NCBI RefSeq assembly: GCF_048593235.1
Contig: NC_133621.1
Span: forward strand, 9,092,525 to 9,156,524
Direction of reading: 5' to 3'
Source: Sminthopsis crassicaudata
Taxonomy: Eukaryota
Length of the DNA: 64,000 bases
Below, one piece after another: positions 20,450 to 54,300 of this stretch (position 1 is the stretch's first letter; every line of letters starts with the position of its first letter). The notes beneath the pieces are model-generated. The model had not been told where the DNA came from and ran no database searches. It saw nothing but the letters and a program-made list of their open reading frames with translations. A program made the position numbers and the translations under genes.

Positions 20450-20534
20450 CTGGATCCTGTCCCAGAAGATGTTCTGCACCAAACTCCAAATAGAAATGCC
20501 ATTATTTCTCTACAAAAGACCACGGAAATTCAAA
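20450..20534 (+). CDS. HDAC9: HDAC9 internal coding exon (85 nt, phase 0 to 1), end of deacetylase domain: LDPVPEDVLHQTPNRNAIISLQKTTEIQ
   Basis: Acceptor tttccctttctcttcctgcag|CTG and donor CAAA|gtatgt; open frame. Resembles human HDAC9 LEPLAEDILHQSPNMNAVISLQKIIEIQ as I recall it. Phase matches the next exon. Confidence 0.95.
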
Positions 20535-20626
20535 GTATGTCTTCGGAGTTCATTGGTGATTTTAAGTCCCTCCTTCTCCCCCCAGTAAGAGCAGGTACAG
20601 CTATTTCAACTGACACAGAGACCTAG
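20535..20626 (+). CDS. HDAC9: Possible read-through alternative C-terminus of HDAC9 (SMSSEFIGDFKSLLLPPVRAGTAISTDTET*)
   Basis: The frame stays open past the donor to TAG at 20624-20626. It starts QSMS, as in the recalled human isoform ending EIQSMSLKFS. Confidence 0.35.
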
Positions 20627-22185
20627 AGTCAGACATTAGAGTGGGCTGCCATTCTGAGTTTAGAAGACTGGTTTGTATTTATAGCTAAATTGATTCCTGA
20701 ATTCTTTGCTTGGCAGTCTCCTTTTAATGCCTTTGCCATCCCTAACCCTCAAATATTACATTTAGAATCTTCTTTTCCTGATGTTCCAAATCCTTCCATT
20801 TTCCATTCCTACCACTGAAGCATTTTGTTACATGGAAAAAATGAGGGGGGAATAGAAATGCTCGATCTTTTAAGTGGCCTGGCCATTATGAAAAAGTAAA
20901 TCATTTATCTTCTCACATTACTGACTGCCAGCCACCATTTATCATACATTCATGATTTAGAGACTCCAATGCAACCCTGATCTCATCAATGTGGGCACTC
21001 CCTTCAACAATTTAGACCGTGACCTATTAGTGCATGCCTTTCCTGGGTGACTCTTGGCCCTTTCTTCCCAGAAGGATCAAAGAGATAACCTATGTGAGCA
21101 CTTTGCAAACCTTACAGTGCTGTATAAACGCCGGCTATTGTTAAAAAATAATTTATAGTTGTTATAGGAGACTCTCTATGATAAATATTTTGAGTATGAG
21201 TATTGGCTCAAAAAATTGAGTATGAATATTCAAAAAAGACTAATATAGAAAGTAATTTGCAAACATTAAAGCATTATACTTGTGTGTATGTTTATATACA
21301 TATATGTAAGTATGTGTGTAGATATGGATTGAGGCATTATTAATTATAATTGATCATTATTATTGGCTATTACTAATGATTAATATTTTAAATTACTAAT
21401 TAATGGGAAAGGATGAACATGTAAAGCAATTTGAAAATCTTGGATTATTATAGAAATGCAAAAACTGTCATTAAAACCCTGAAAGGTAGATGCTATTAGC
21501 ATCCCCATTTTATAGATAATAGAAGAAAAAAACTGAGGCAAAGGTAAGTAACTTGATTAAGATCTCACAATTAACAAGTGTTTAAGAATAGATTTGAATT
21601 CAGATATTCTTGGACTTCAAATCTAGAATTCGATTCAATCTACCACTTAGTTGTCTTTTATGAATAATTTATTTTTATTATTATTTATAAATGCTTACTG
21701 ATTTTAATAATATTATTAAGCTTACCATAAAAGTCCACCAAATGTATTGCATAGGAGGAAAAAATCAACCATTTGCTATCATCAGTGAAGCCAGCATAAT
21801 TGCGACCAGAGACCAGAATTTTGGGGTCCCCTTTTCTGTTTAATATCTATCTCTTTTACATTGCTGATACCCTGTCACCAAAAATAATACAACATTAATT
21901 TTGAAAAAGTTAGCAAACTCAAACGCTTCCAAATTTTCAGCTGCATGAAAAATCGAGTACCTATCAGATGGGAAGGTCCAGGAAGGCAGCAACTATGGCT
22001 TCTTGAATTTTGTATATCCTCAAAAATCTTCCCAGTATTCTGCACGTGGTACAATTTTAATGAATTAAATTTAATTAGTGACAAAGTGGTGCTAAGAATC
22101 CATGTCTCCCACTTCCTGTTCTAGTCTGAAGGTCATTTCATCTCTTTGCACATTTAGCTTTCCTAGGACCTTCTGCCGTATTATC

Positions 22186-22790
22186 ATAAATCAAACCTCA
22201 AAATAAACAAGAATGAACTTAAGAAGGTAAAGAGAATTTTGAAAAAGTTAGACCTTTGGAGAAAACTGGAAATGAATAGAAAGAAACATACTTTTTGCTT
22301 AGTAGTACATGGACCCAATACAAAAATTTACCATTTAGTAGGGCATAAACCCTCAAAATAAAATGCAAAAAGGCAGAAATAGTAAGTCCATCTTTTTCAG
22401 ATCATGATGCAATAAAAATTACATGTAATAAAGGGCCAGGTGAAAAATAGATGGGAAATCTATTCATTGGAAAGTAACTGGAAATTAAATAATCTATTCC
22501 TAAAGAATGAGTGGGTGAAACAAGAAATCATAAAAACAAAAAATAATTTCATCCAAGAGAATGAAAATAATGTGACAACATACCAAAATTTATGGGATGA
22601 AACCATAGCAGTTCTTAGGGGAAATTTCATATCTTTAGAAGTTTATTTGAATAAAAGAGAATAAGAATATCAATGAATTGAGCATGCAACTAAAAAAACC
22701 TAGAAAAAGAACAAATTAAAACCCCTCAATTAAATACCAAGGTTGAAATTCTGAAAATAAAAGGTGAGATTAATAAAAGTGAAAGCTAAA
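22186..22790 (+). mobile_element. L1 internal ORF2 fragment (endonuclease/linker region)
   Basis: WKLNNLFLKNEWVKQEI...TTYQNLWD in track ORF 22440..22664. Confidence 0.9.
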
Positions 22791-22880
22791 TAAATAAACA
22801 AACATATAAATAAATAAACAAATGAATAAATGAATAAATAAATAAATAGATAGATAGATAGATAAGTAAATAAATAAATT
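22787..22880. repeat. Compound (TAAA/CAAA/TGAA/TAGA)n repeat
   Basis: Seen directly. Confidence 0.9.
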
Positions 22881-25800
22881 ACATATTGAACTAACAACAT
22901 ATTATCTTTGTGGGCACATTCCCAGAGCATAGGAAGTTGGCTGAAATAAGAAGGAAGGTAATGTTGCCAAAACAAATAAATCAATCAACCCACCAACCAA
23001 CCAACTTTTATGGGTGTGGAAGTGGCTCTAATCTTGAAGGTATATTTCTTATCAGATATAGTCCCAGCCTGAGTCCCCTCTTTCTCTTCCCAGCTCTTAT
23101 CTAACCTGAGGCAGAATAAAATTGGTAAATTGATACAGTGCTGGGCCTGGAATCAGGCCTGAAATCAAATCCAGGCTCAGATACTTACTTGCTGTGGGAC
23201 CTTGTGCAAGTCATTTAATGATTCCCTAGTTTTTTTGTAAAATGGATATAAAAAATACCTACATCTCAGAGTTGTTGTGAAGATCAAATGAAATAGTAAT
23301 CATTATGGGTTTAATATAGTGGTTGACACATAATAATAGCTATATTAATGTTAGCTATATTATTGTTATTATTAATTTTTATTTCTATTTACCACTCTCT
23401 GTGTTTGACTTAGAAGTCAATATCTAGATGTTATGACCAGAGAAGTGATGTACAAGGGAACTTGGAAATTATTTCATTCAACATCTTATTTTAAAGGTAA
23501 AAAAAAACAGGGGCTGAGAGAAGGACAATGACCTGACCAGATCCCATGGGGAACAGGTTAACATGCGAATTAATTTGCAAATATTAATTCATTATATTTG
23601 TGTGTATATACATATATATATGTATGTATGTATGCTAGACATCATATCAAACCAATCAGAAAGCATGAAGTGAGTAATAAATACGTGCCAAGCAATGGCC
23701 TAGGTTGGGCAATACAAAGACAAAATTCAAAGGCTCTCGAGGAACTTATGTTCTTTTTTTTTGGGGGGACAGACCATATGCACATCAATAACTAAATAGA
23801 AAATATGTTTGAAGAAATATTTAGGTGACAGAGAGGGCTCCAGCAATTGGGGAAATCAGGAAATCCCTGAAATATCTTGTTTCAAAGTGAAAGAGTACAA
23901 TTTGACTTTCAAAATGAGTTCATGGTATCATCAGTCTAGAGCTGAAAAGAACCTGAGAGGCTGTCTAGTACAAATACCTTATTTTATAGATGAGGAAATG
24001 AAGGCCGAGGGACTTTCCCAAGAGTACATTCATAATGAGACAGAGGGATTCAAAGTCAAGTTCTCTGATTCCAAAGCCCATGTTCTTACCTTGGAACTGT
24101 ATCATCTTCCAATTAAGGCAGGTAGGATTTCTAATTTGTTGTTAATTCTTTAAGACCTTAGAGCAATTCTTATTGCCTTGGTTCTGGCTCCTGAAGTTAC
24201 ACTTTGTTTACCAGCAAAGTTTTCCTTTCACTATGAGCCCTCTATCTCCACGTGCTTATAGTCTAGGGAGGTGTTCTGGTTTCAGCTCCCCATCCCATCT
24301 CCAGCTGGGTTCTGAAGGGTTCTTTTGTGCTATCTGAAAATGATGAAAATGTGCTGAGGCAGGCCCCAAAGCATGTGGGAACCATTCAGTGGGGTTCCCA
24401 GATAGCTGAGTCCCCAGGCACACTGTGAGGTGCTGACAGGTTGTATGTGAGCTTTGGTTTGAGGGGGGAGCCCCCCAGCTGAGGGTGTGCAGGTGCCTGA
24501 GTCTCTCATTAGCATTGGCCCCTTGCCTGGCAGCTGCCTGTGCTCATGGGTCCTTTGGCAGCATCATCCCTTTCCTTCTGACTCTTTTTAATTTCTAAGC
24601 TTAACCAAAGGAGATCATACCAGAAAAGAGAGTGAATCAGGGTCATTGTATAGATATCAACTTAACCTATATTTCAGGAGCCTGCAGGTGGGGATGTTCA
24701 GGAAGTCCAAAAGCACATGGAGAAGTCAAGACTTGACCATGTATCTGTCTTTTTTCATGTATTTGCTACTTCCTTAGTGGCTTCTTATTTGTCTAAAGTG
24801 ACCCTATTTCTGGTTGGCCTTAGGATCTGACCAAAATCAGACAGATGATCAGAAACTTCAGGTTCTAGCTTCTTCCCAGAATTCATGAGTTGAATAATTT
24901 CCAAGTTAATAAGGAAGAATTACTTTGGGTAGCAATTTCATTTTCTCCCAAGTTTCTCCCAAGTTGGGAGATAGTATGTCACAAAACATATAATAGCAAT
25001 TTATATTTTGTCTGTTATCATATACAGGCAGTTATGCACCTGGGAACTTTACCAGGGTGGGACATCTGACCACTTCTAAATAGTGGATAGAATTGGGGAG
25101 AAATGGCCACCTATTACTGTCTACCTCACAGGGTTCTTGAAAGGCTCAAATCTAGTAAATATGTAAAGTGCTATGTCACATTTAAGGATAATGGTCATGG
25201 GTGCACTTTTAAAATGAAAGCTAGCCCAGAATAGCATCAGAATTCCAGTATCTATGTCTGAAAGATGCAAATTCATTCAACCAAATCATTCTGACTTTTT
25301 GACTCAGAAATGTTTCCTTAAATATGTTTATACTTTACCACCCTTCAATGTAGATGTGCGCTGGCTGAGATGATTTCATAGAGTCACCATAAAAGGAAAG
25401 TGGGAAGACAGAAGNNNNNNNNNNNNNNNNNNNNNNNNNNNNNNNNNNNNNNNNNNNNNNNNNNNNNNNNNNNNNNNNNNNNNNNNNNNNNNNNNNNNNN
25501 NNNNNNNNNNNNNNNNNNNNNNNNNNNNNNNNNNNNNNNNNNNNNNNNNNNNNNNNNNNNNNNNNNNNNNNNNNNNNNNNNNNNNNNNNNNNNNNNNNNN
25601 NNNNNNNNNNNNNNNNNNNNNNNNNNNNNNNNNNNNNNNNNNNNNNNNNNNNNNNNNNNNNNNNNNNNNNNNNNCAACTATATCAGAGATATGCTAAGTG
25701 ATTGCATATATTTTATTTGATTCTCACAATTCTGGAGGTAAGCACTCTCTCATTTTATATTTGAGCAAATGGAGGCAATTGTAATGTACAGGTGCTTCCT

Positions 25801-35325: not shown

Positions 35326-35539
35326 GTCTTTTTAATGTATGGCTCTCCAAATTTATGATTGCTTGTATTTCAAAATTTTCAATAGCTTACTGTTCCAGTC
35401 TAGCCCCTGAGGCTGGAGGAAAAGTACATCTAGGACTAATAAACCTGACTCTTTTGGTGCCCTCACTGCCCCTGTTTTCTGCATGAATTTCTAGGTTTTT
35501 ATTTTCCCTTAGAACCCATATTTCTGCTCTTACCCTTAC

Positions 35540-35857
35540 CTTTTCCTTTCTCTAGCGCTCTCTCCTACCTCAACGAACATCACAGCTGACTTCTTTGTCA
35601 GCCAGGCAAGTTATAAGTATAAAGATGGGCACTCAGACCATGAACGCTGGCTCATCTTGTTATTTGCTCATTCTGCTGGAGCAAGACCCTATACCAGTTG
35701 CCTTCCCCTGAGAAGACCCCCAAATGTGGTGGACGTAGAGATTTGTCCATTTCTCATTTCCTATTTCCTAACTCTTCCTTGTTGGCTCTGGGAGATTGTG
35801 CCGCTAATATCTGTGCAGATCCAAACAACCATAAATTGTGGTGCCTTGTTCTTTTAG
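35540..35857. promoter_or_regulatory. Non-repeat, CpG-retaining intron flank upstream of the penultimate exon
   Basis: Several CpGs, no recognisable repeat, and cryptic splice signals. Confidence 0.35.
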
Positions 35858-36002
35858 GTAAGTACTGGAAGTCAGTGGAGAGGTTTTCCGGCTGTGCTCT
35901 GACTGGAACTCAGGAACAAGAACAAGAGGAAAGAGAGACTGTTTCTGCCCTGGCTTCTCTGTCTGTGGATGTGGACCAGTGCTTTGCTAAGGAAGACAGC
36001 AG
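35858..36002 (+). CDS. HDAC9: HDAC9 penultimate coding exon (145 nt, phase 1 to 2): (S)KYWKSVERFSGCALTGTQEQEQEERETVSALASLSVDVDQCFAKEDS(R); includes the class IIa C-terminal export-signal region
   Basis: Acceptor gtgccttgttcttttag|GT and donor CAG|gtatga. SKYW and ETVSALASLSVD are class IIa HDAC hallmarks. Lies inside track ORF 35698..36069. Confidence 0.95.
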
Positions 36003-36485
36003 GTATGAATTGAGTTCTGGAAGTGTATTTAGGGCAGGTGGGTTGAGTCCCACTCATTCTTACTTTTAAATCTTATGATCTTTCACTCCCTCTCTCCCAC
36101 CTCTAGCCACCCTAACCTGTTTCCTACCAAACCACTAAGACCACCCCCTCAATGTGATGTCAAAGATTTATTCTTTCTGTGAAAGATAGAGATAGGAAGC
36201 TCCGACTCTGCCCCCTGAAGAATTAGCTGAATGCGGATGGATGGGTGCTAATTCCAAGCTCAGGGACAGATAATTGAAAATTGTGAAAAGAGCCACATGG
36301 AGGCTTTGGACCTTTCCATATTGCTTGTATTATCTAAGTTGGATTTTTAGCTCCTCACACAATTGATATTTTGTAAATTGGTGATAGGAATGTCAAGGGA
36401 AGAAGAGAAGGACAGAAGGAAGCTGGGACTAGTCTCTGGGTATAAACTGATCTGTAGTATTACAAATCTCAAAGTAAAAAATCTT

Positions 36486-50989: not shown

Positions 50990-51631
50990 GCTTTAGGATA
51001 TGCAAGTCAAATATTGGGTTGAAAATCTGAAGCGCTTGCATTTGGTTTTCACCGAATGGCTAAGGCCCGAGATGCTGCCTAATAAAACCAGATAAACCCT
51101 AGAGATGATTTCTAGTCCAAATTCTGAGTGCTTTGCCGTGATTTGCTAATCAAATTCAGAATCTGATTTGAAGGGCCGCGGGCAGTCCGCCAATCCAGTC
51201 ATGAAAAACCAGAAGCACAAGGCCTCACGTGAGGAACCCCCACTTCCAGACCCAGTGAGCCGCTCTCATCTTTCGAATCAGAAAAGCTTGTGAATGAATG
51301 TCCCTCCAGTAGGATACTATCATTATTTTTTTAATTAACATCTTTGACTCTCCGAGATAGAAACCATGAGCTTTTCTGAAGCGAGAGTTATAAAATATTC
51401 TGACATGTTTTAATATAAACAGGAATGTTTGCCGTGATTGCCGGGATCGAGAATGTTTTTCCACTTGACATGTGTTTATACTTCCTAGGAAAGAAACTCT
51501 ATTTATGGATAGCTGAATAGCACAAATAAACATCAGAGAGAGCTGAAAAATCAGTTTTGATTATGCATGAAAATCTACCATGTCATTGTGTACTCCTCGG
51601 CCCTCTTCTGATTGCCTGTTTATTTTTACAG
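50990..51631. promoter_or_regulatory. CpG-retaining non-repeat block at the end of the last intron; candidate enhancer or promoter-like element
   Basis: About 16 CpGs here and about 30 over 51000-52310 by hand count, in a CpG-depleted window. Contains palindrome CCTCACGTGAGG (51223-51234), CCAAT (51190), TTTGCCGTGATT twice, and CTAATAAAA. Confidence 0.55.
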
Positions 51632-51671
51632 ACCTGCTGGCGAGCCCATGGATGAAGATCCAGCCCTGTGA
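51632..51671 (+). CDS. HDAC9: HDAC9 last exon, coding part: (R)PAGEPMDEDPAL*
   Basis: Acceptor ctgattgcctgtttatttttacag|A. Phase-2 entry completes AGA; TGA at 51669-51671. Matches the recalled human HDAC9 terminus AGEPMEEEPAL. Confidence 0.95.
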
Positions 51672-54300
51672 AGTGCCAAGTTCCCCCTCCCTGGTATTTC
51701 CTGTGTGTGACATCATTGTGTATCTCCCCACCCCCAACCCCCAACCAAGCACCCTCAGACATGTCTTGTCTGCTGCCTGGGTGGCACACATCGAATGGAA
51801 TATAAACACTGGGCACAGAGCACACACAGCAACTTCACTTGTCCCCTGGCCGGACTTGAAAGGGCCCGAAAGATTCCTCCAGTGTAACCACTCTGACTCT
51901 AAAGTTACAGGCGACGGTCCTGAGAGGGATGGCTGGCCTCCAACATGTGGGCTCTAAATGTGCTGGGCAACCCGGGGCAGAGGAGAAAAGGGCCTGGGCT
52001 AGCCCACGGACTTGGCACTCTCCACATTATAGAGACGGGGATAGCCCTAACGGCATTCTTTCAGACATGCTGAATTGGTTTCGATGGGCTAATTTTTTTC
52101 ACATGGTTTTAAATTGTGTACAGGATTTGTTTTCAACTCTGAGCAAACAAGATAACATATTGTACCTTTGTTTTTACACCCTCGCAAATTCTAGCAAGTG
52201 AGAGGTCAAAATTTTAGAGAAATGGGGTGAGGGCATTTTTAGTCTGAAAGCCAAGTGCTTCCTCCTTCAAAATCTAGATCCCCAAGGCGGTGGCGTTGTG
52301 GTAGGGCGCAATTTGGGATTTTCTTTTTTGATTATGTATGAAAAAGAAAATGTTTTTGGAAAATGGAATCTCTGTTTCACTCATATCCCACTCGAGGTTC
52401 TCACAGATGGCAGGGCTCTGGTTTCTTTGGTGGCTGGAAGCTTCTTCCCATTTCTTAAGAATCCCTCATTCTTCCAATGACAATCCTTTGGAGTCTCTGG
52501 TCCACAGGGACTCCCATTTCCTTTGAAAAGAATAATTTTTCTAAGATGCCCATACTTTGCTCCACAAGTTTTGCTGAGCCCACATATTTCTAGCTGGCTG
52601 AGTTTTCCCCATACGAGCACCTTTGTGGCTCAGATGTTTCTTAAATTACGTTTCTACTTTAAGATAATTATGGGGCTTGATTATTGTATTGTTGTCTCAT
52701 ATTAAAGTCCATAGGTTGAGCATTATTTATGAAACTTGGGAGGATTTAGATGAGAGATTAGTTTTTTTTTTAATCATTGAAATGTGTCATTATTTACAAA
52801 ATAGCATCAGCTACTTGATTTCATATTGGTTAGTATTAACTGAGGGCTGTGCCTTTAACCAGTAGTGGACCCTTGACCTTTCCACATGTTGCCTTATGGT
52901 CAGAAGATTTAAAAAAAAATTGGAAATTCATTTTCTGAGTTCAAAATCAACTCATATTGTGACACAGAGGGTAAGTTTTCTTTTTCAGTATTCTATTTTC
53001 ATGGGCAGCTCTATCACCTAAAACATCTGAAAAGAAATATTACCATCCAGGATTCTTCTTGCTGTATTTAATACCGAGCATTGCTTTGGAAACCTATTGG
53101 TATTCTTTTTGTTAAATATATATTTTCCTAACTCAAAGGATATATTAAAGCAATAAGTGAAGATTGTCATGCTTTTATTCAGAAATCGAAAAGGAACCTT
53201 AATTTAAACAAGGTTTGAGGGAAGGCCATGCTCTGAAAGATATGCAGCAATGTGGTTTGAGTTAGAGAGGGCTCAAACCTGTAAATCAAAGATGAAAGGT
53301 TTCACTCAAGGAGAATTATATAACTCTCTTTTGTTATAGTCAGACTCTATTTTTCATGTGTTGGTGTGGGGTTTTTTTAGGATTACTATTTTAATTTTAA
53401 AGACTTTTATTACATATACAAAAACTGCCGGATACTTGGTTTAACATCTTAGAAATCCGAGCCATCCTTTGAAATGGGGTAATCTGAAAGGGAATGCAGC
53501 TCTGCATTAGGGAAAAATGGATTTATATTTTTGGGAAGGGGAAGGTTAATATGGATTCATCACGTTGATTACATTTTTGTAAATTTCCTCCCAAGTTTTC
53601 ACGGAAAACTCATGACACCCTTCTTGCTCATCAGTTGCAGTTAATTCCCAGTTATCACTTCAAGAAATGCATTTTTAAGAGACTTGGGCAGCTAGGCCTG
53701 TGGCTTGAAAAGATCATTTTCCTGTCACATTGTTTAACAATTTTACATCATGTTTTAATTGGAAACATAATTGTATTTCTTTAAAATTAACTTGAAACTG
53801 CAAAATTCTATGATCTATCTTCTGTCCCTACCAGACCTTGTATTTTTTCATGAGAATGAAGAAAAAAAGAAGTTTTGACAACCTCCTGTAAATTAACTGG
53901 TTTGCGGATTGATGGTCCATTATTGCAGGTTGGCAAATCCAAGCCTCGGCCGTCCAAATCATGGTGCATTCAAAAATGAATCATCCGTTGGCCTTGAGAG
54001 GAGGCATTCACTGGCCCAGAGTTGGGGTCTGTGCGATTCAGGGACAAGCAGAGAGATTCTGTAGAAGACTGATCATGGCTGAATGTATTTCTGAGCCCAG
54101 AGCATCACTGTATTGTATACCATTATACCATTAAAAGAATGGCTGCCTTGAGGGATAGGATAGAGGTTTTGGGAGAATATCAACACTTCTGAAACCCACC
54201 AGAAATGGTGGAAAGTCACTTTCACTTGCTAGTGTGTACTTCACACAATCATATCATCATTGTTATTATTATTACTAGTTTCCCAAAGGAGGCTATTCTA

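What the first reader, a model, noticed from the sequence alone, without database searches (positions are those of the whole stretch)
35841..36008. HDAC9 export-signal exon begins with a perfect 5' splice site: candidate recursive-splicing switch
Seen: the acceptor reads ttcttttag|GTAAGTACTGG, so the first six exon bases are the consensus donor. Splicing to the upstream exon rebuilds CAAA|GTAAGT, which is closer to consensus in its intronic part than the upstream exon's own gtatgt and this exon's own gtatga. Established: AG/GT recursive-splice exons can be removed after ligation and are held in check by the exon junction complex; class IIa HDACs carry a nuclear export signal around the ETV(S/T)A(L/M)ASLSV motif. 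Inference: re-splicing would delete the export region and shift the frame, giving a nuclear-retained isoform. The GT arises from the split Ser codon A|GT; I recall A|GC in human, unverified, so this could be a synonymous, lineage-specific gain.
Basis: partly seen in the sequence, partly recalled or inferred. Interest (0 to 1): 0.8.

Follow-up and report, generated by a model that had tools for sequence, protein, structure and literature searches.

The report
HDAC9 exon starting with a splice-donor motif
A silent C-to-T change made the second-to-last coding exon of this marsupial's HDAC9 gene begin with a perfect splice-donor motif, so it could in principle be spliced back out, but such exons are common and usually kept, and no evidence of removal could be obtained.

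Summary
Window 35858-36002 (+) is a 145-nt coding exon with acceptor ttcttttag|GTAAGT and its own donor CAG|gtatga. Joined to 20450-20534 and 51632-51671 it gives an 89-aa tail that is 87.6% identical to a sugar-glider protein and 66-68% identical to HDAC9. It carries the ETVSALASLSV export-type motif.

Splicing to the upstream exon rebuilds AAA|GTAAGT. Skipping the exon shifts the frame, replacing 61 residues with a 108-aa tail that stops in the last exon.

Nine other amniote loci (six eutherian-like, two squamate-like, one named bird) all start this exon with GCAA(G/A)T. Only the window has GT (Ser A|GC to A|GT).

The change looks neutral: the window also differs at 2 of the 4 other synonymous codons that are invariant in the nine.

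By published definition this is a putative recursive-splice exon. That class covers 3.6% of human exons, and 93.8% of those are constitutive. RNA runs hold the exon without its introns, so it is included. No junction or lariat data could be obtained.

Verdict: a new member of a known kind. The claim that it acts as a switch is unproven.

The parts
20450..20534 (+). Upstream coding exon (85 nt, LDPVPEDV...TTEIQ plus the first base of the Ser codon). Its last three bases, AAA, form the exonic half of the rebuilt donor. It is long enough for an exon junction complex about 24 nt upstream of the junction.
   Evidence: 80% identical to the bird exon, with the same boundaries.
20535..20540 (+). Own donor of the upstream exon, gtatgt. 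It is the weakest of the three donors.
   Evidence: 6 U1 pairs, duplex dG -4.2. The same AAA|gtatgt is present in the bird.
35838..35857 (+). Polypyrimidine tract and AG acceptor of the exon.
   Evidence: Homologous acceptors are present in nine other loci.
35858..35863 (+). GTAAGT, the first six exon bases, identical to the consensus intronic half of a 5' splice site. In unspliced RNA the context is TAG|GTAAGT; after ligation it is AAA|GTAAGT.
   Evidence: U1 duplex dG -11.9 unspliced, -7.0 spliced, -2.8 for the ancestral GC form.
35859..35859 (+). Derived T, a silent change in the split Ser codon (A|GC to A|GT). It converts GCAAGT into GTAAGT.
   Evidence: C in nine other amniote loci. T confirmed in the run X5 contig.
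35858..36002 (+). Penultimate coding exon of HDAC9, 145 nt (1 mod 3). By definition a putative recursive-splice exon.
   Evidence: Runs X1-X3 hold all exon words but only half of the exon-plus-flank words, which indicates spliced inclusion.
35935..35967 (+). Codons for ETVSALASLSV, homologous to the class IIa HDAC C-terminal export motif. The Leu in SLSV aligns with HDAC4 L1062.
   Evidence: Coordinates, alignment. The HDAC4 L1062A mutant is described as nuclear in PMC12721432.
36003..36008 (+). Own donor of the exon, CAG|gtatga, which would compete with the rebuilt donor.
   Evidence: 7 U1 pairs, dG -7.2. Shared with the eutherian-like loci; the bird has CAG|gtaagt.
51632..51671 (+). Coding part of the last exon (PAGEPMDEDPAL plus stop), after a strong acceptor.
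51632..51957 (+). Reading frame used if the exon is skipped: a 108-aa unrelated tail with its stop at 51955-51957 inside the last exon, so no nonsense-mediated decay is expected.
   Evidence: The same frame in the bird stops after 19 aa, so it is not a conserved coding frame.

Best explanation
This is the normal, included penultimate coding exon of HDAC9 in a marsupial. It became a putative recursive-splice exon through one neutral, silent C-to-T transition in the split Ser codon.

Shown: the ancestral amniote exon start is GCAAGT, forced by the codons Ser-Lys-Tyr. The window has GTAAGT. After ligation to the upstream exon the junction reads AAA|GTAAGT, a U1 site about as good as the exon's own donor.

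Inferred: the upstream 15.3-kb intron is removed first. An exon junction complex is then laid about 24 nt upstream of the junction and blocks the spliceosome from using the rebuilt donor. The exon's own donor at 36003 is joined to 51632 and the full-length, export-competent HDAC9 is made.

A small leak of re-splicing (20534 joined to 51632) is possible. It would give a stable mRNA for an HDAC9 that lacks the export motif and carries a 108-aa frameshifted tail. Nothing indicates that this leak is large or regulated.
For: - Exon structure, frame and identity.
- GC in nine other amniote loci, including the named bird Acanthisitta chloris, against GT here.
- Neutrality: 4 of 17 amino-acid-invariant degenerate codons are invariant in the nine others, and the window differs at 2 of those 4. 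A window-only silent change is therefore ordinary.
- Inclusion: runs X1-X3, X8 and X15-X17 hold the exon words but not the flanking intron words.
- Base rates from PMC6224609: 3.6% of human exons rebuild a donor, 93.8% of those are constitutive, and 26.8% become skipped on eIF4A3 knockdown.
- The skip frame is not conserved as an open frame in the bird.
Against: - The rebuilt site is strong: perfect +1 to +6, 7 U1 pairs, dG -7.0 against -7.2 for the own donor.
- It is predicted to be open in the part-spliced RNA (0.83 unpaired against 0.35 for the own donor).
- The exon's own donor, gtatga, is not strong.
- Blazquez et al. report that raising the strength of the rebuilt site caused skipping even with the exon junction complex present.
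- Long flanking introns favour removal of the upstream intron first, which is the order needed for re-splicing (inference).
- No junction counts were obtained, so substantial skipping is not excluded.
Confidence: 0.68

Rival explanations
1. Real recursive splicing. After the upstream intron is removed, AAA|GTAAGT outcompetes or partly escapes repression by the exon junction complex and is joined to 51632. This removes the exon in a sizeable fraction of transcripts, possibly tissue-dependent. It would yield an HDAC9 without the export motif that stays in the nucleus.
For: All sequence prerequisites are met. A GC-to-GT mutation at the start of an RPS2 exon was enough to make it a recursive-splice exon sensitive to eIF4A3 knockdown, and stronger rebuilt sites gave skipping even with the exon junction complex present. 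The skipped mRNA ends in the last exon, so it should be stable. Recursive splicing is documented as a physiological route for some exons.
Against: No read evidence. The exon is present in spliced RNA. 93.8% of such exons are constitutive. The substitution looks neutral. The resulting 108-aa tail is not a conserved frame. Position -1 of the rebuilt site is A, not G.
Confidence: 0.2
2. Non-recursive effect. In unspliced RNA the site reads TAG|GTAAGT, a near-perfect U1 site lying on top of the acceptor AG. U1 bound there could hinder acceptor recognition and cause ordinary exon skipping. It could also be used as a classical zero-length ratchet point. In either case the exon is never ligated first.
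For: The U1 duplex for the unspliced context is 9 pairs, dG -11.9, far stronger than after ligation. The motif equals the ratchet-point consensus.
Against: The exon is included in RNA, so the acceptor works. A donor needs an upstream acceptor to define an exon, and none is evident. No read evidence either way.
Confidence: 0.07
3. The T is an assembly error or a rare allele, not a fixed feature of the species.
For: Only one species carries it. Contigs drop minor alleles, so a C allele could be hidden (tool note).
Against: T is present in a run X5 contig from another study. All sampled words of 35790-36070 are held by X4, X5 and DNA runs of two samples in two studies.
Confidence: 0.05

Closest known systems
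Annotated recursive-splice exons repressed by the exon junction complex (Blazquez et al. 2018, PMC6224609), e.g. KPNA1
   Same: A real, included exon whose first bases plus the end of the preceding exon rebuild a 5' splice site. The expected outcome is constitutive inclusion protected by the exon junction complex, with skipping when the complex is depleted.
   Different: No measurement of skipping or of dependence on the complex exists here. The hexamer is a perfect GTAAGT. The exon is frame-shifting and carries an export motif. HDAC9, HDAC4, HDAC5 and HDAC7 do not appear in that paper's supplementary tables.
Engineered GC-to-GT mutation at the start of an RPS2 exon (same paper, Figure 3H)
   Same: The same single-base change at the same position (second exon base, GC to GT), turning a non-recursive exon into one able to re-splice.
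   Different: That was a laboratory mutation in a human minigene. Here it is a natural silent substitution in a marsupial lineage, with untested effect.
Cryptic recursive-splice exons and ratchet points in long introns (Sibley et al. 2015: CADM2 and others; Drosophila Ubx)
   Same: The juxtaposed acceptor-donor motif YnAG|GTAAGT, followed by a downstream donor that defines the exon. A long neuronal gene with 15-kb flanking introns.
   Different: Those exons are non-coding, normally removed and serve stepwise intron removal. This exon is conserved, coding and included.
HDAC9 isoforms lacking the C-terminal export signal (MITR/HDRP; C-terminally truncated forms)
   Same: They yield HDAC9 proteins without the export signal that tend to be nuclear (PMC7912504, PMC8516780).
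   Different: They arise by alternative 3' ends or other exon choices, not by re-splicing of this exon. Gene models reading through the upstream donor (EIQSMS...) exist in other species (P0059, P0029). The read-through sequence is not conserved between window and bird.

Membership tests
Putative recursive-splice exon (definition of Blazquez et al. 2018) | A genuine exon that is spliced to the preceding exon | tested here: met
   The three exons join in frame into a conserved HDAC9 C-terminus. The same exon boundaries are found in nine other loci. RNA runs hold the exon without its flanking introns.
Putative recursive-splice exon (definition of Blazquez et al. 2018) | The exon-exon junction rebuilds a 5' splice site above the MaxEntScan threshold of 5.52 | tested here: inconclusive
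   MaxEntScan was not available. Proxies: AAA|GTAAGT has 7 U1 pairs, dG -7.0, equal to the exon's real donor and better than the upstream real donor. It very likely passes, but the defining score was not computed.
EJC-sensitive recursive-splice exon | Skipping rises when EIF4A3, RBM8A or MAGOH is depleted and depends on the intact rebuilt donor | not testable with these tools
   This needs knockdown or minigene experiments.
Exon actually undergoing recursive splicing | Skip junction (20534 to 51632) and lariats whose 5' end is the first exon base (35858) | tested here: inconclusive
   The single read-laying run placed only two unspliced contigs of run X5. The mRNA-type runs gave nothing, and the tool notes that a filter can drop contigs.
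Intronic ratchet point / cryptic recursive-splice exon | Juxtaposed acceptor and consensus donor, YnAG|GTAAGT | tested here: met
   ttcttttag|GTAAGT.
Intronic ratchet point / cryptic recursive-splice exon | The exon is non-coding and normally absent from mature mRNA | tested here: not met
   The exon is coding, conserved across amniotes and present in spliced RNA.
HDAC9 (class IIa histone deacetylase) C-terminal export exon | Orthology to HDAC9 rather than HDAC4, HDAC5 or HDAC7 | tested here: met
   The 89-aa tail is 87.6% identical to a Petaurus protein, 66-68% to HDAC9 (Castor and a eutherian type), 50-53% to HDAC4, 41-46% to HDAC5 and 43% to an HDAC7-like protein.
HDAC9 (class IIa histone deacetylase) C-terminal export exon | A hydrophobic export motif that mediates CRM1-dependent export | not testable with these tools
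   The motif ETVSALASLSV is present at 35935-35967 and aligns with HDAC4 AMASLSV, whose L1062A mutant is nuclear. Function in this protein is inferred. The primary paper (McKinsey 2001) was not held.

The most novel reading that the evidence does not exclude
A single silent substitution gave this marsupial lineage a new route, tunable by the exon junction complex, to a nuclear HDAC9 lacking the export signal. Where the complex is limiting, for example in some neural or muscle states, the exon would be re-spliced out. That would shift HDAC9 towards constitutive nuclear repression. It would be a natural, datable example of a recursive-splice exon being born and put to use.
Probability: 0.08. Interest if true: 0.65.

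Novelty: new member of a known kind. Interest (0 to 1): 0.3.

Why it matters
If the exon is simply included, this is one more of the several thousand exons that rebuild a donor and are kept in check. It adds little beyond a clean natural parallel to the RPS2 GC-to-GT experiment.

Its value is as a natural experiment. The same conserved exon begins with GC in nine other amniote loci and GT here. Comparing inclusion levels between this species and relatives would show how much protection the exon junction complex gives a newly created, near-perfect donor.

If skipping were substantial, a silent mutation would have created an HDAC9 isoform with altered localisation. That would matter for how synonymous changes are judged.

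Tried and rejected
- Read evidence: the only read-laying run (window 35500-36400; runs X1, X5, X13, X10) placed two unspliced X5 contigs. It placed nothing from the mRNA-type run or from the two relatives' runs, so it gave no junctions and no state in the relatives.
- A homologue search with the 47-aa exon peptide found nothing because of the length filter.
- Other marsupials:
  - The Petaurus protein P0054 has no DNA on record.
  - A search seeded with P0054 found no further marsupial HDAC9 fragments.
  - A degenerate-pattern scan of metagenome contigs gave only two unrelated bacterial matches.
  - The Trichosurus HDAC4 locus was too large to fetch.
- An exact look-up of a 90-aa 3'UTR ORF, meant to pull RNA contigs of this species, was not on record.
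- MaxEntScan is not installed, and a literature search for the 9-mers was useless.
- McKinsey 2001 and Petrie 2003 are not held.
- Read-through of the upstream donor as an alternative route to an isoform without the export motif: only the exon, not the intron start, is conserved with the bird.
- The second AGGTAAGT, at 21542, has no pyrimidine tract and looks like part of a MIR-type repeat (my recognition, not tested). It is rejected as a recursive site.
- No catalytic-domain exon (EGGHDLTAICDASE) lies in the window on either strand.

Full report
**1. What is in the sequence**

The acceptor reads ttcttttag|GTAAGTACTGG, with the exon starting at 35858. The exon ends GACAGCAG|gtatga at 36002/36003 and is 145 nt long. 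The upstream exon is 20450-20534 and ends AATTCAAA|gtatgt. The last exon begins at 51632 after a long pyrimidine tract.

Joined, the three exons give an 89-residue open frame that ends in a stop at 51669-51671. After ligation the junction reads AAA|GTAAGT.

A 592-nt contig of public run X5 covers 35768-36359 and differs only at 36234, so the T at 35859 is real in an independent data set. Runs X4 and X5 and DNA runs from two samples hold every sampled word of 35790-36070.

**2. Which gene it is**

A library-wide HMMER search with the 47-residue exon peptide returned 20 hits, all C-terminal pieces of class IIa deacetylases. A profile search then returned named proteins.

The 89-residue tail compares as follows:
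- 87.6% identical to a Petaurus breviceps (sugar glider) protein
- 66-68% to HDAC9 (beaver and a eutherian type)
- 50-53% to HDAC4
- 41-46% to HDAC5
- 43% to an HDAC7-like protein

It is therefore the HDAC9 orthologue of a marsupial.

The exon encodes ETVSALASLSV at 35935-35967. This aligns with HDAC4 ...AMASLSV.... Counting back from the C-terminus, and taking the 1084-residue length of HDAC4 from my own knowledge, the Leu in that motif is L1062. The L1062A mutant is described as nuclear in PMC12721432. Reviews place the class IIa export signal near the C-terminus and note that MITR lacks it and is often nuclear (PMC7912504, PMC8516780). That the motif functions in this protein is inferred.

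**3. Consequences of skipping**

145 is 1 mod 3. Joining 20534 to 51632 replaces the normal 61 residues after ...EIQ with 108 unrelated residues. The stop falls at 51955-51957 inside the last exon, so decay is not expected and the catalytic domain is untouched. In the bird the same frame stops after 19 residues, so the long tail is not a conserved coding frame.

**4. Strength of the sites**

MaxEntScan was not available. Pairing to the U1 5' end was used instead:

| Site | Context | U1 pairs | Duplex dG |
|---|---|---|---|
| Rebuilt site, spliced | AAA\|GTAAGT | 7 | -7.0 |
| Exon's own donor | CAG\|GTATGA | 7 | -7.2 |
| Upstream exon's donor | AAA\|GTATGT | 6 | -4.2 |
| Ancestral form, spliced | AAA\|GCAAGT | 6 | -2.8 |
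| Unspliced context | TAG\|GTAAGT | 9 | -11.9 |

In a fold of the part-spliced RNA the rebuilt site is mostly unpaired (0.83), against 0.35 for the own donor. On sequence grounds the rebuilt site is thus a serious competitor.

**5. Is the GT lineage-specific?**

Genomic contigs carrying the homologous exon were fetched for nine other species:
- six eutherian-like (L001, L002/L003, L005/L006, L007, L008, L009)
- two squamate-like (L004, and L010 from GCA_020142125.1)
- the bird Acanthisitta chloris (L013)

All begin the exon with GCAAGT, or GCAAAT in one. Only the window has GTAAGT. The layout, the phase and the upstream donor AAA|gtatgt are the same in the bird. Every exon length is 1 mod 3.

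The window's A|GT is a derived, silent transition. How deep it goes within marsupials could not be determined.

**6. Is the change more than drift?**

Seventeen degenerate codons in the exon have the same amino acid in all ten species. Four of them are codon-invariant in the nine others. The window differs at two of those four, GAG to GAA and GCC to GCT. A silent change private to this long branch is thus what neutral divergence produces. The invariance of the C elsewhere is not unusual either. The octamer AGGTAAGT occurs at chance frequency in the window (2 found, 2.14 expected).

**7. Is the exon used or removed?**

Runs X1-X3, X8 and X15-X17 hold all or nearly all sampled words of the 145-nt exon (1.00; X8 0.83). 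They hold only about half (0.42-0.50) of the words of the 281-nt stretch that adds the intron flanks. This is the pattern of spliced RNA that contains the exon.

The 15-kb introns cannot fit the permitted stretch. Skipping and lariats therefore remain untested.

**8. Comparison with what is known**

Blazquez et al. 2018 (PMC6224609) define any exon that rebuilds a donor at the preceding junction as a putative recursive-splice exon. Their figures:
- 3.6% of human exons (6,837) qualify.
- 93.8% of those are constitutive.
- 26.8% of the expressed ones become skipped on eIF4A3 knockdown.

The exon junction complex blocks spliceosome assembly on the rebuilt site. Sensitive exons tend to have the upstream intron removed first and to have weaker own donors. 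Stronger rebuilt sites cause skipping even with the complex present. A GC-to-GT mutation at the start of an RPS2 exon was enough to create a sensitive exon. Recursive lariats and physiological use exist for some exons. HDAC9 and its paralogues are not in that paper's supplementary tables.

The window's exon meets the sequence definition of this class. It is a natural copy of the RPS2 mutation. It is not a cryptic ratchet-point exon, because it is coding, conserved and included.

**9. Verdict**

The most likely reading (about 0.68) is a constitutive HDAC9 exon that a neutral silent change turned into a putative recursive-splice exon kept in by the exon junction complex.

| Reading | Probability |
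|---|---|
| Constitutive exon, kept in by the exon junction complex | about 0.68 |
| Appreciable real re-splicing | about 0.2 |
| Interference by U1 at the unspliced acceptor | about 0.07 |
| Allele or assembly artefact | about 0.05 |

Within the 0.2 for real re-splicing, a regulated switch with a function is well under 0.1. It is a new member of a known kind, of modest interest mainly as a natural experiment.

Noticed in passing
L001, L002, L008 (about 17 nt into the homologous exon): Eutherian-like copies carry their own internal donor-like site, TC(G/A)|GTAAGG, from the codons Ser-Val-Arg. It lies about 17 nt after the exon start, close to the range where the exon junction complex is reported to repress internal donors. 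U1 duplex dG is -8.7 for the TCG form. Donor-like motifs near this junction seem to be tolerated.
   Followed up: partly
window 51566-51891 vs L013 57701-58006: The last exon, including at least 220 nt of 3'UTR right after the stop codon, is 82% identical between marsupial and bird over 327 nt. This is as conserved as the coding exons, and the match runs to the end of the fetched bird locus. It is probably a conserved regulatory 3'UTR.
   Followed up: partly
L013 about 48750 vs window 36003: The exon's own donor is a perfect CAG|gtaagt in the bird but CAG|gtatga in the window and in the eutherian-like loci.
   Followed up: no
window 20535-20625; proteins P0059, P0029: Reading through the upstream donor gives Ser-Met-... 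and a stop after 30 codons in the window. Gene models in a ground squirrel and a tortoise end in similar read-through peptides (EIQSMS..., EIQSMF...). Only the exon, not the intron start, is conserved with the bird.
   Followed up: partly
window 21542-21549: The only other AGGTAAGT in the window lies in a purine-rich context that resembles a MIR-type SINE core (actgaggcaaaggtaagtaacttg). It has no pyrimidine tract.
   Followed up: partly
window 22200-23120: A dense cluster of AATAAA hexamers, about 15 in 900 nt, lies in the intron downstream of the upstream exon. It is likely an A-rich simple or tandem repeat.
   Followed up: no
window 36234: The run X5 contig reads T where the window has C. 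This is an intronic difference, probably a polymorphism.
   Followed up: no
window 1-20449: The preceding catalytic-domain exon (EGGHDLTAICDASE motif) is not found on either strand of the window. In the bird it lies 9 kb upstream of the next exon, so here it is probably beyond the window start or inside an N run.
   Followed up: partly
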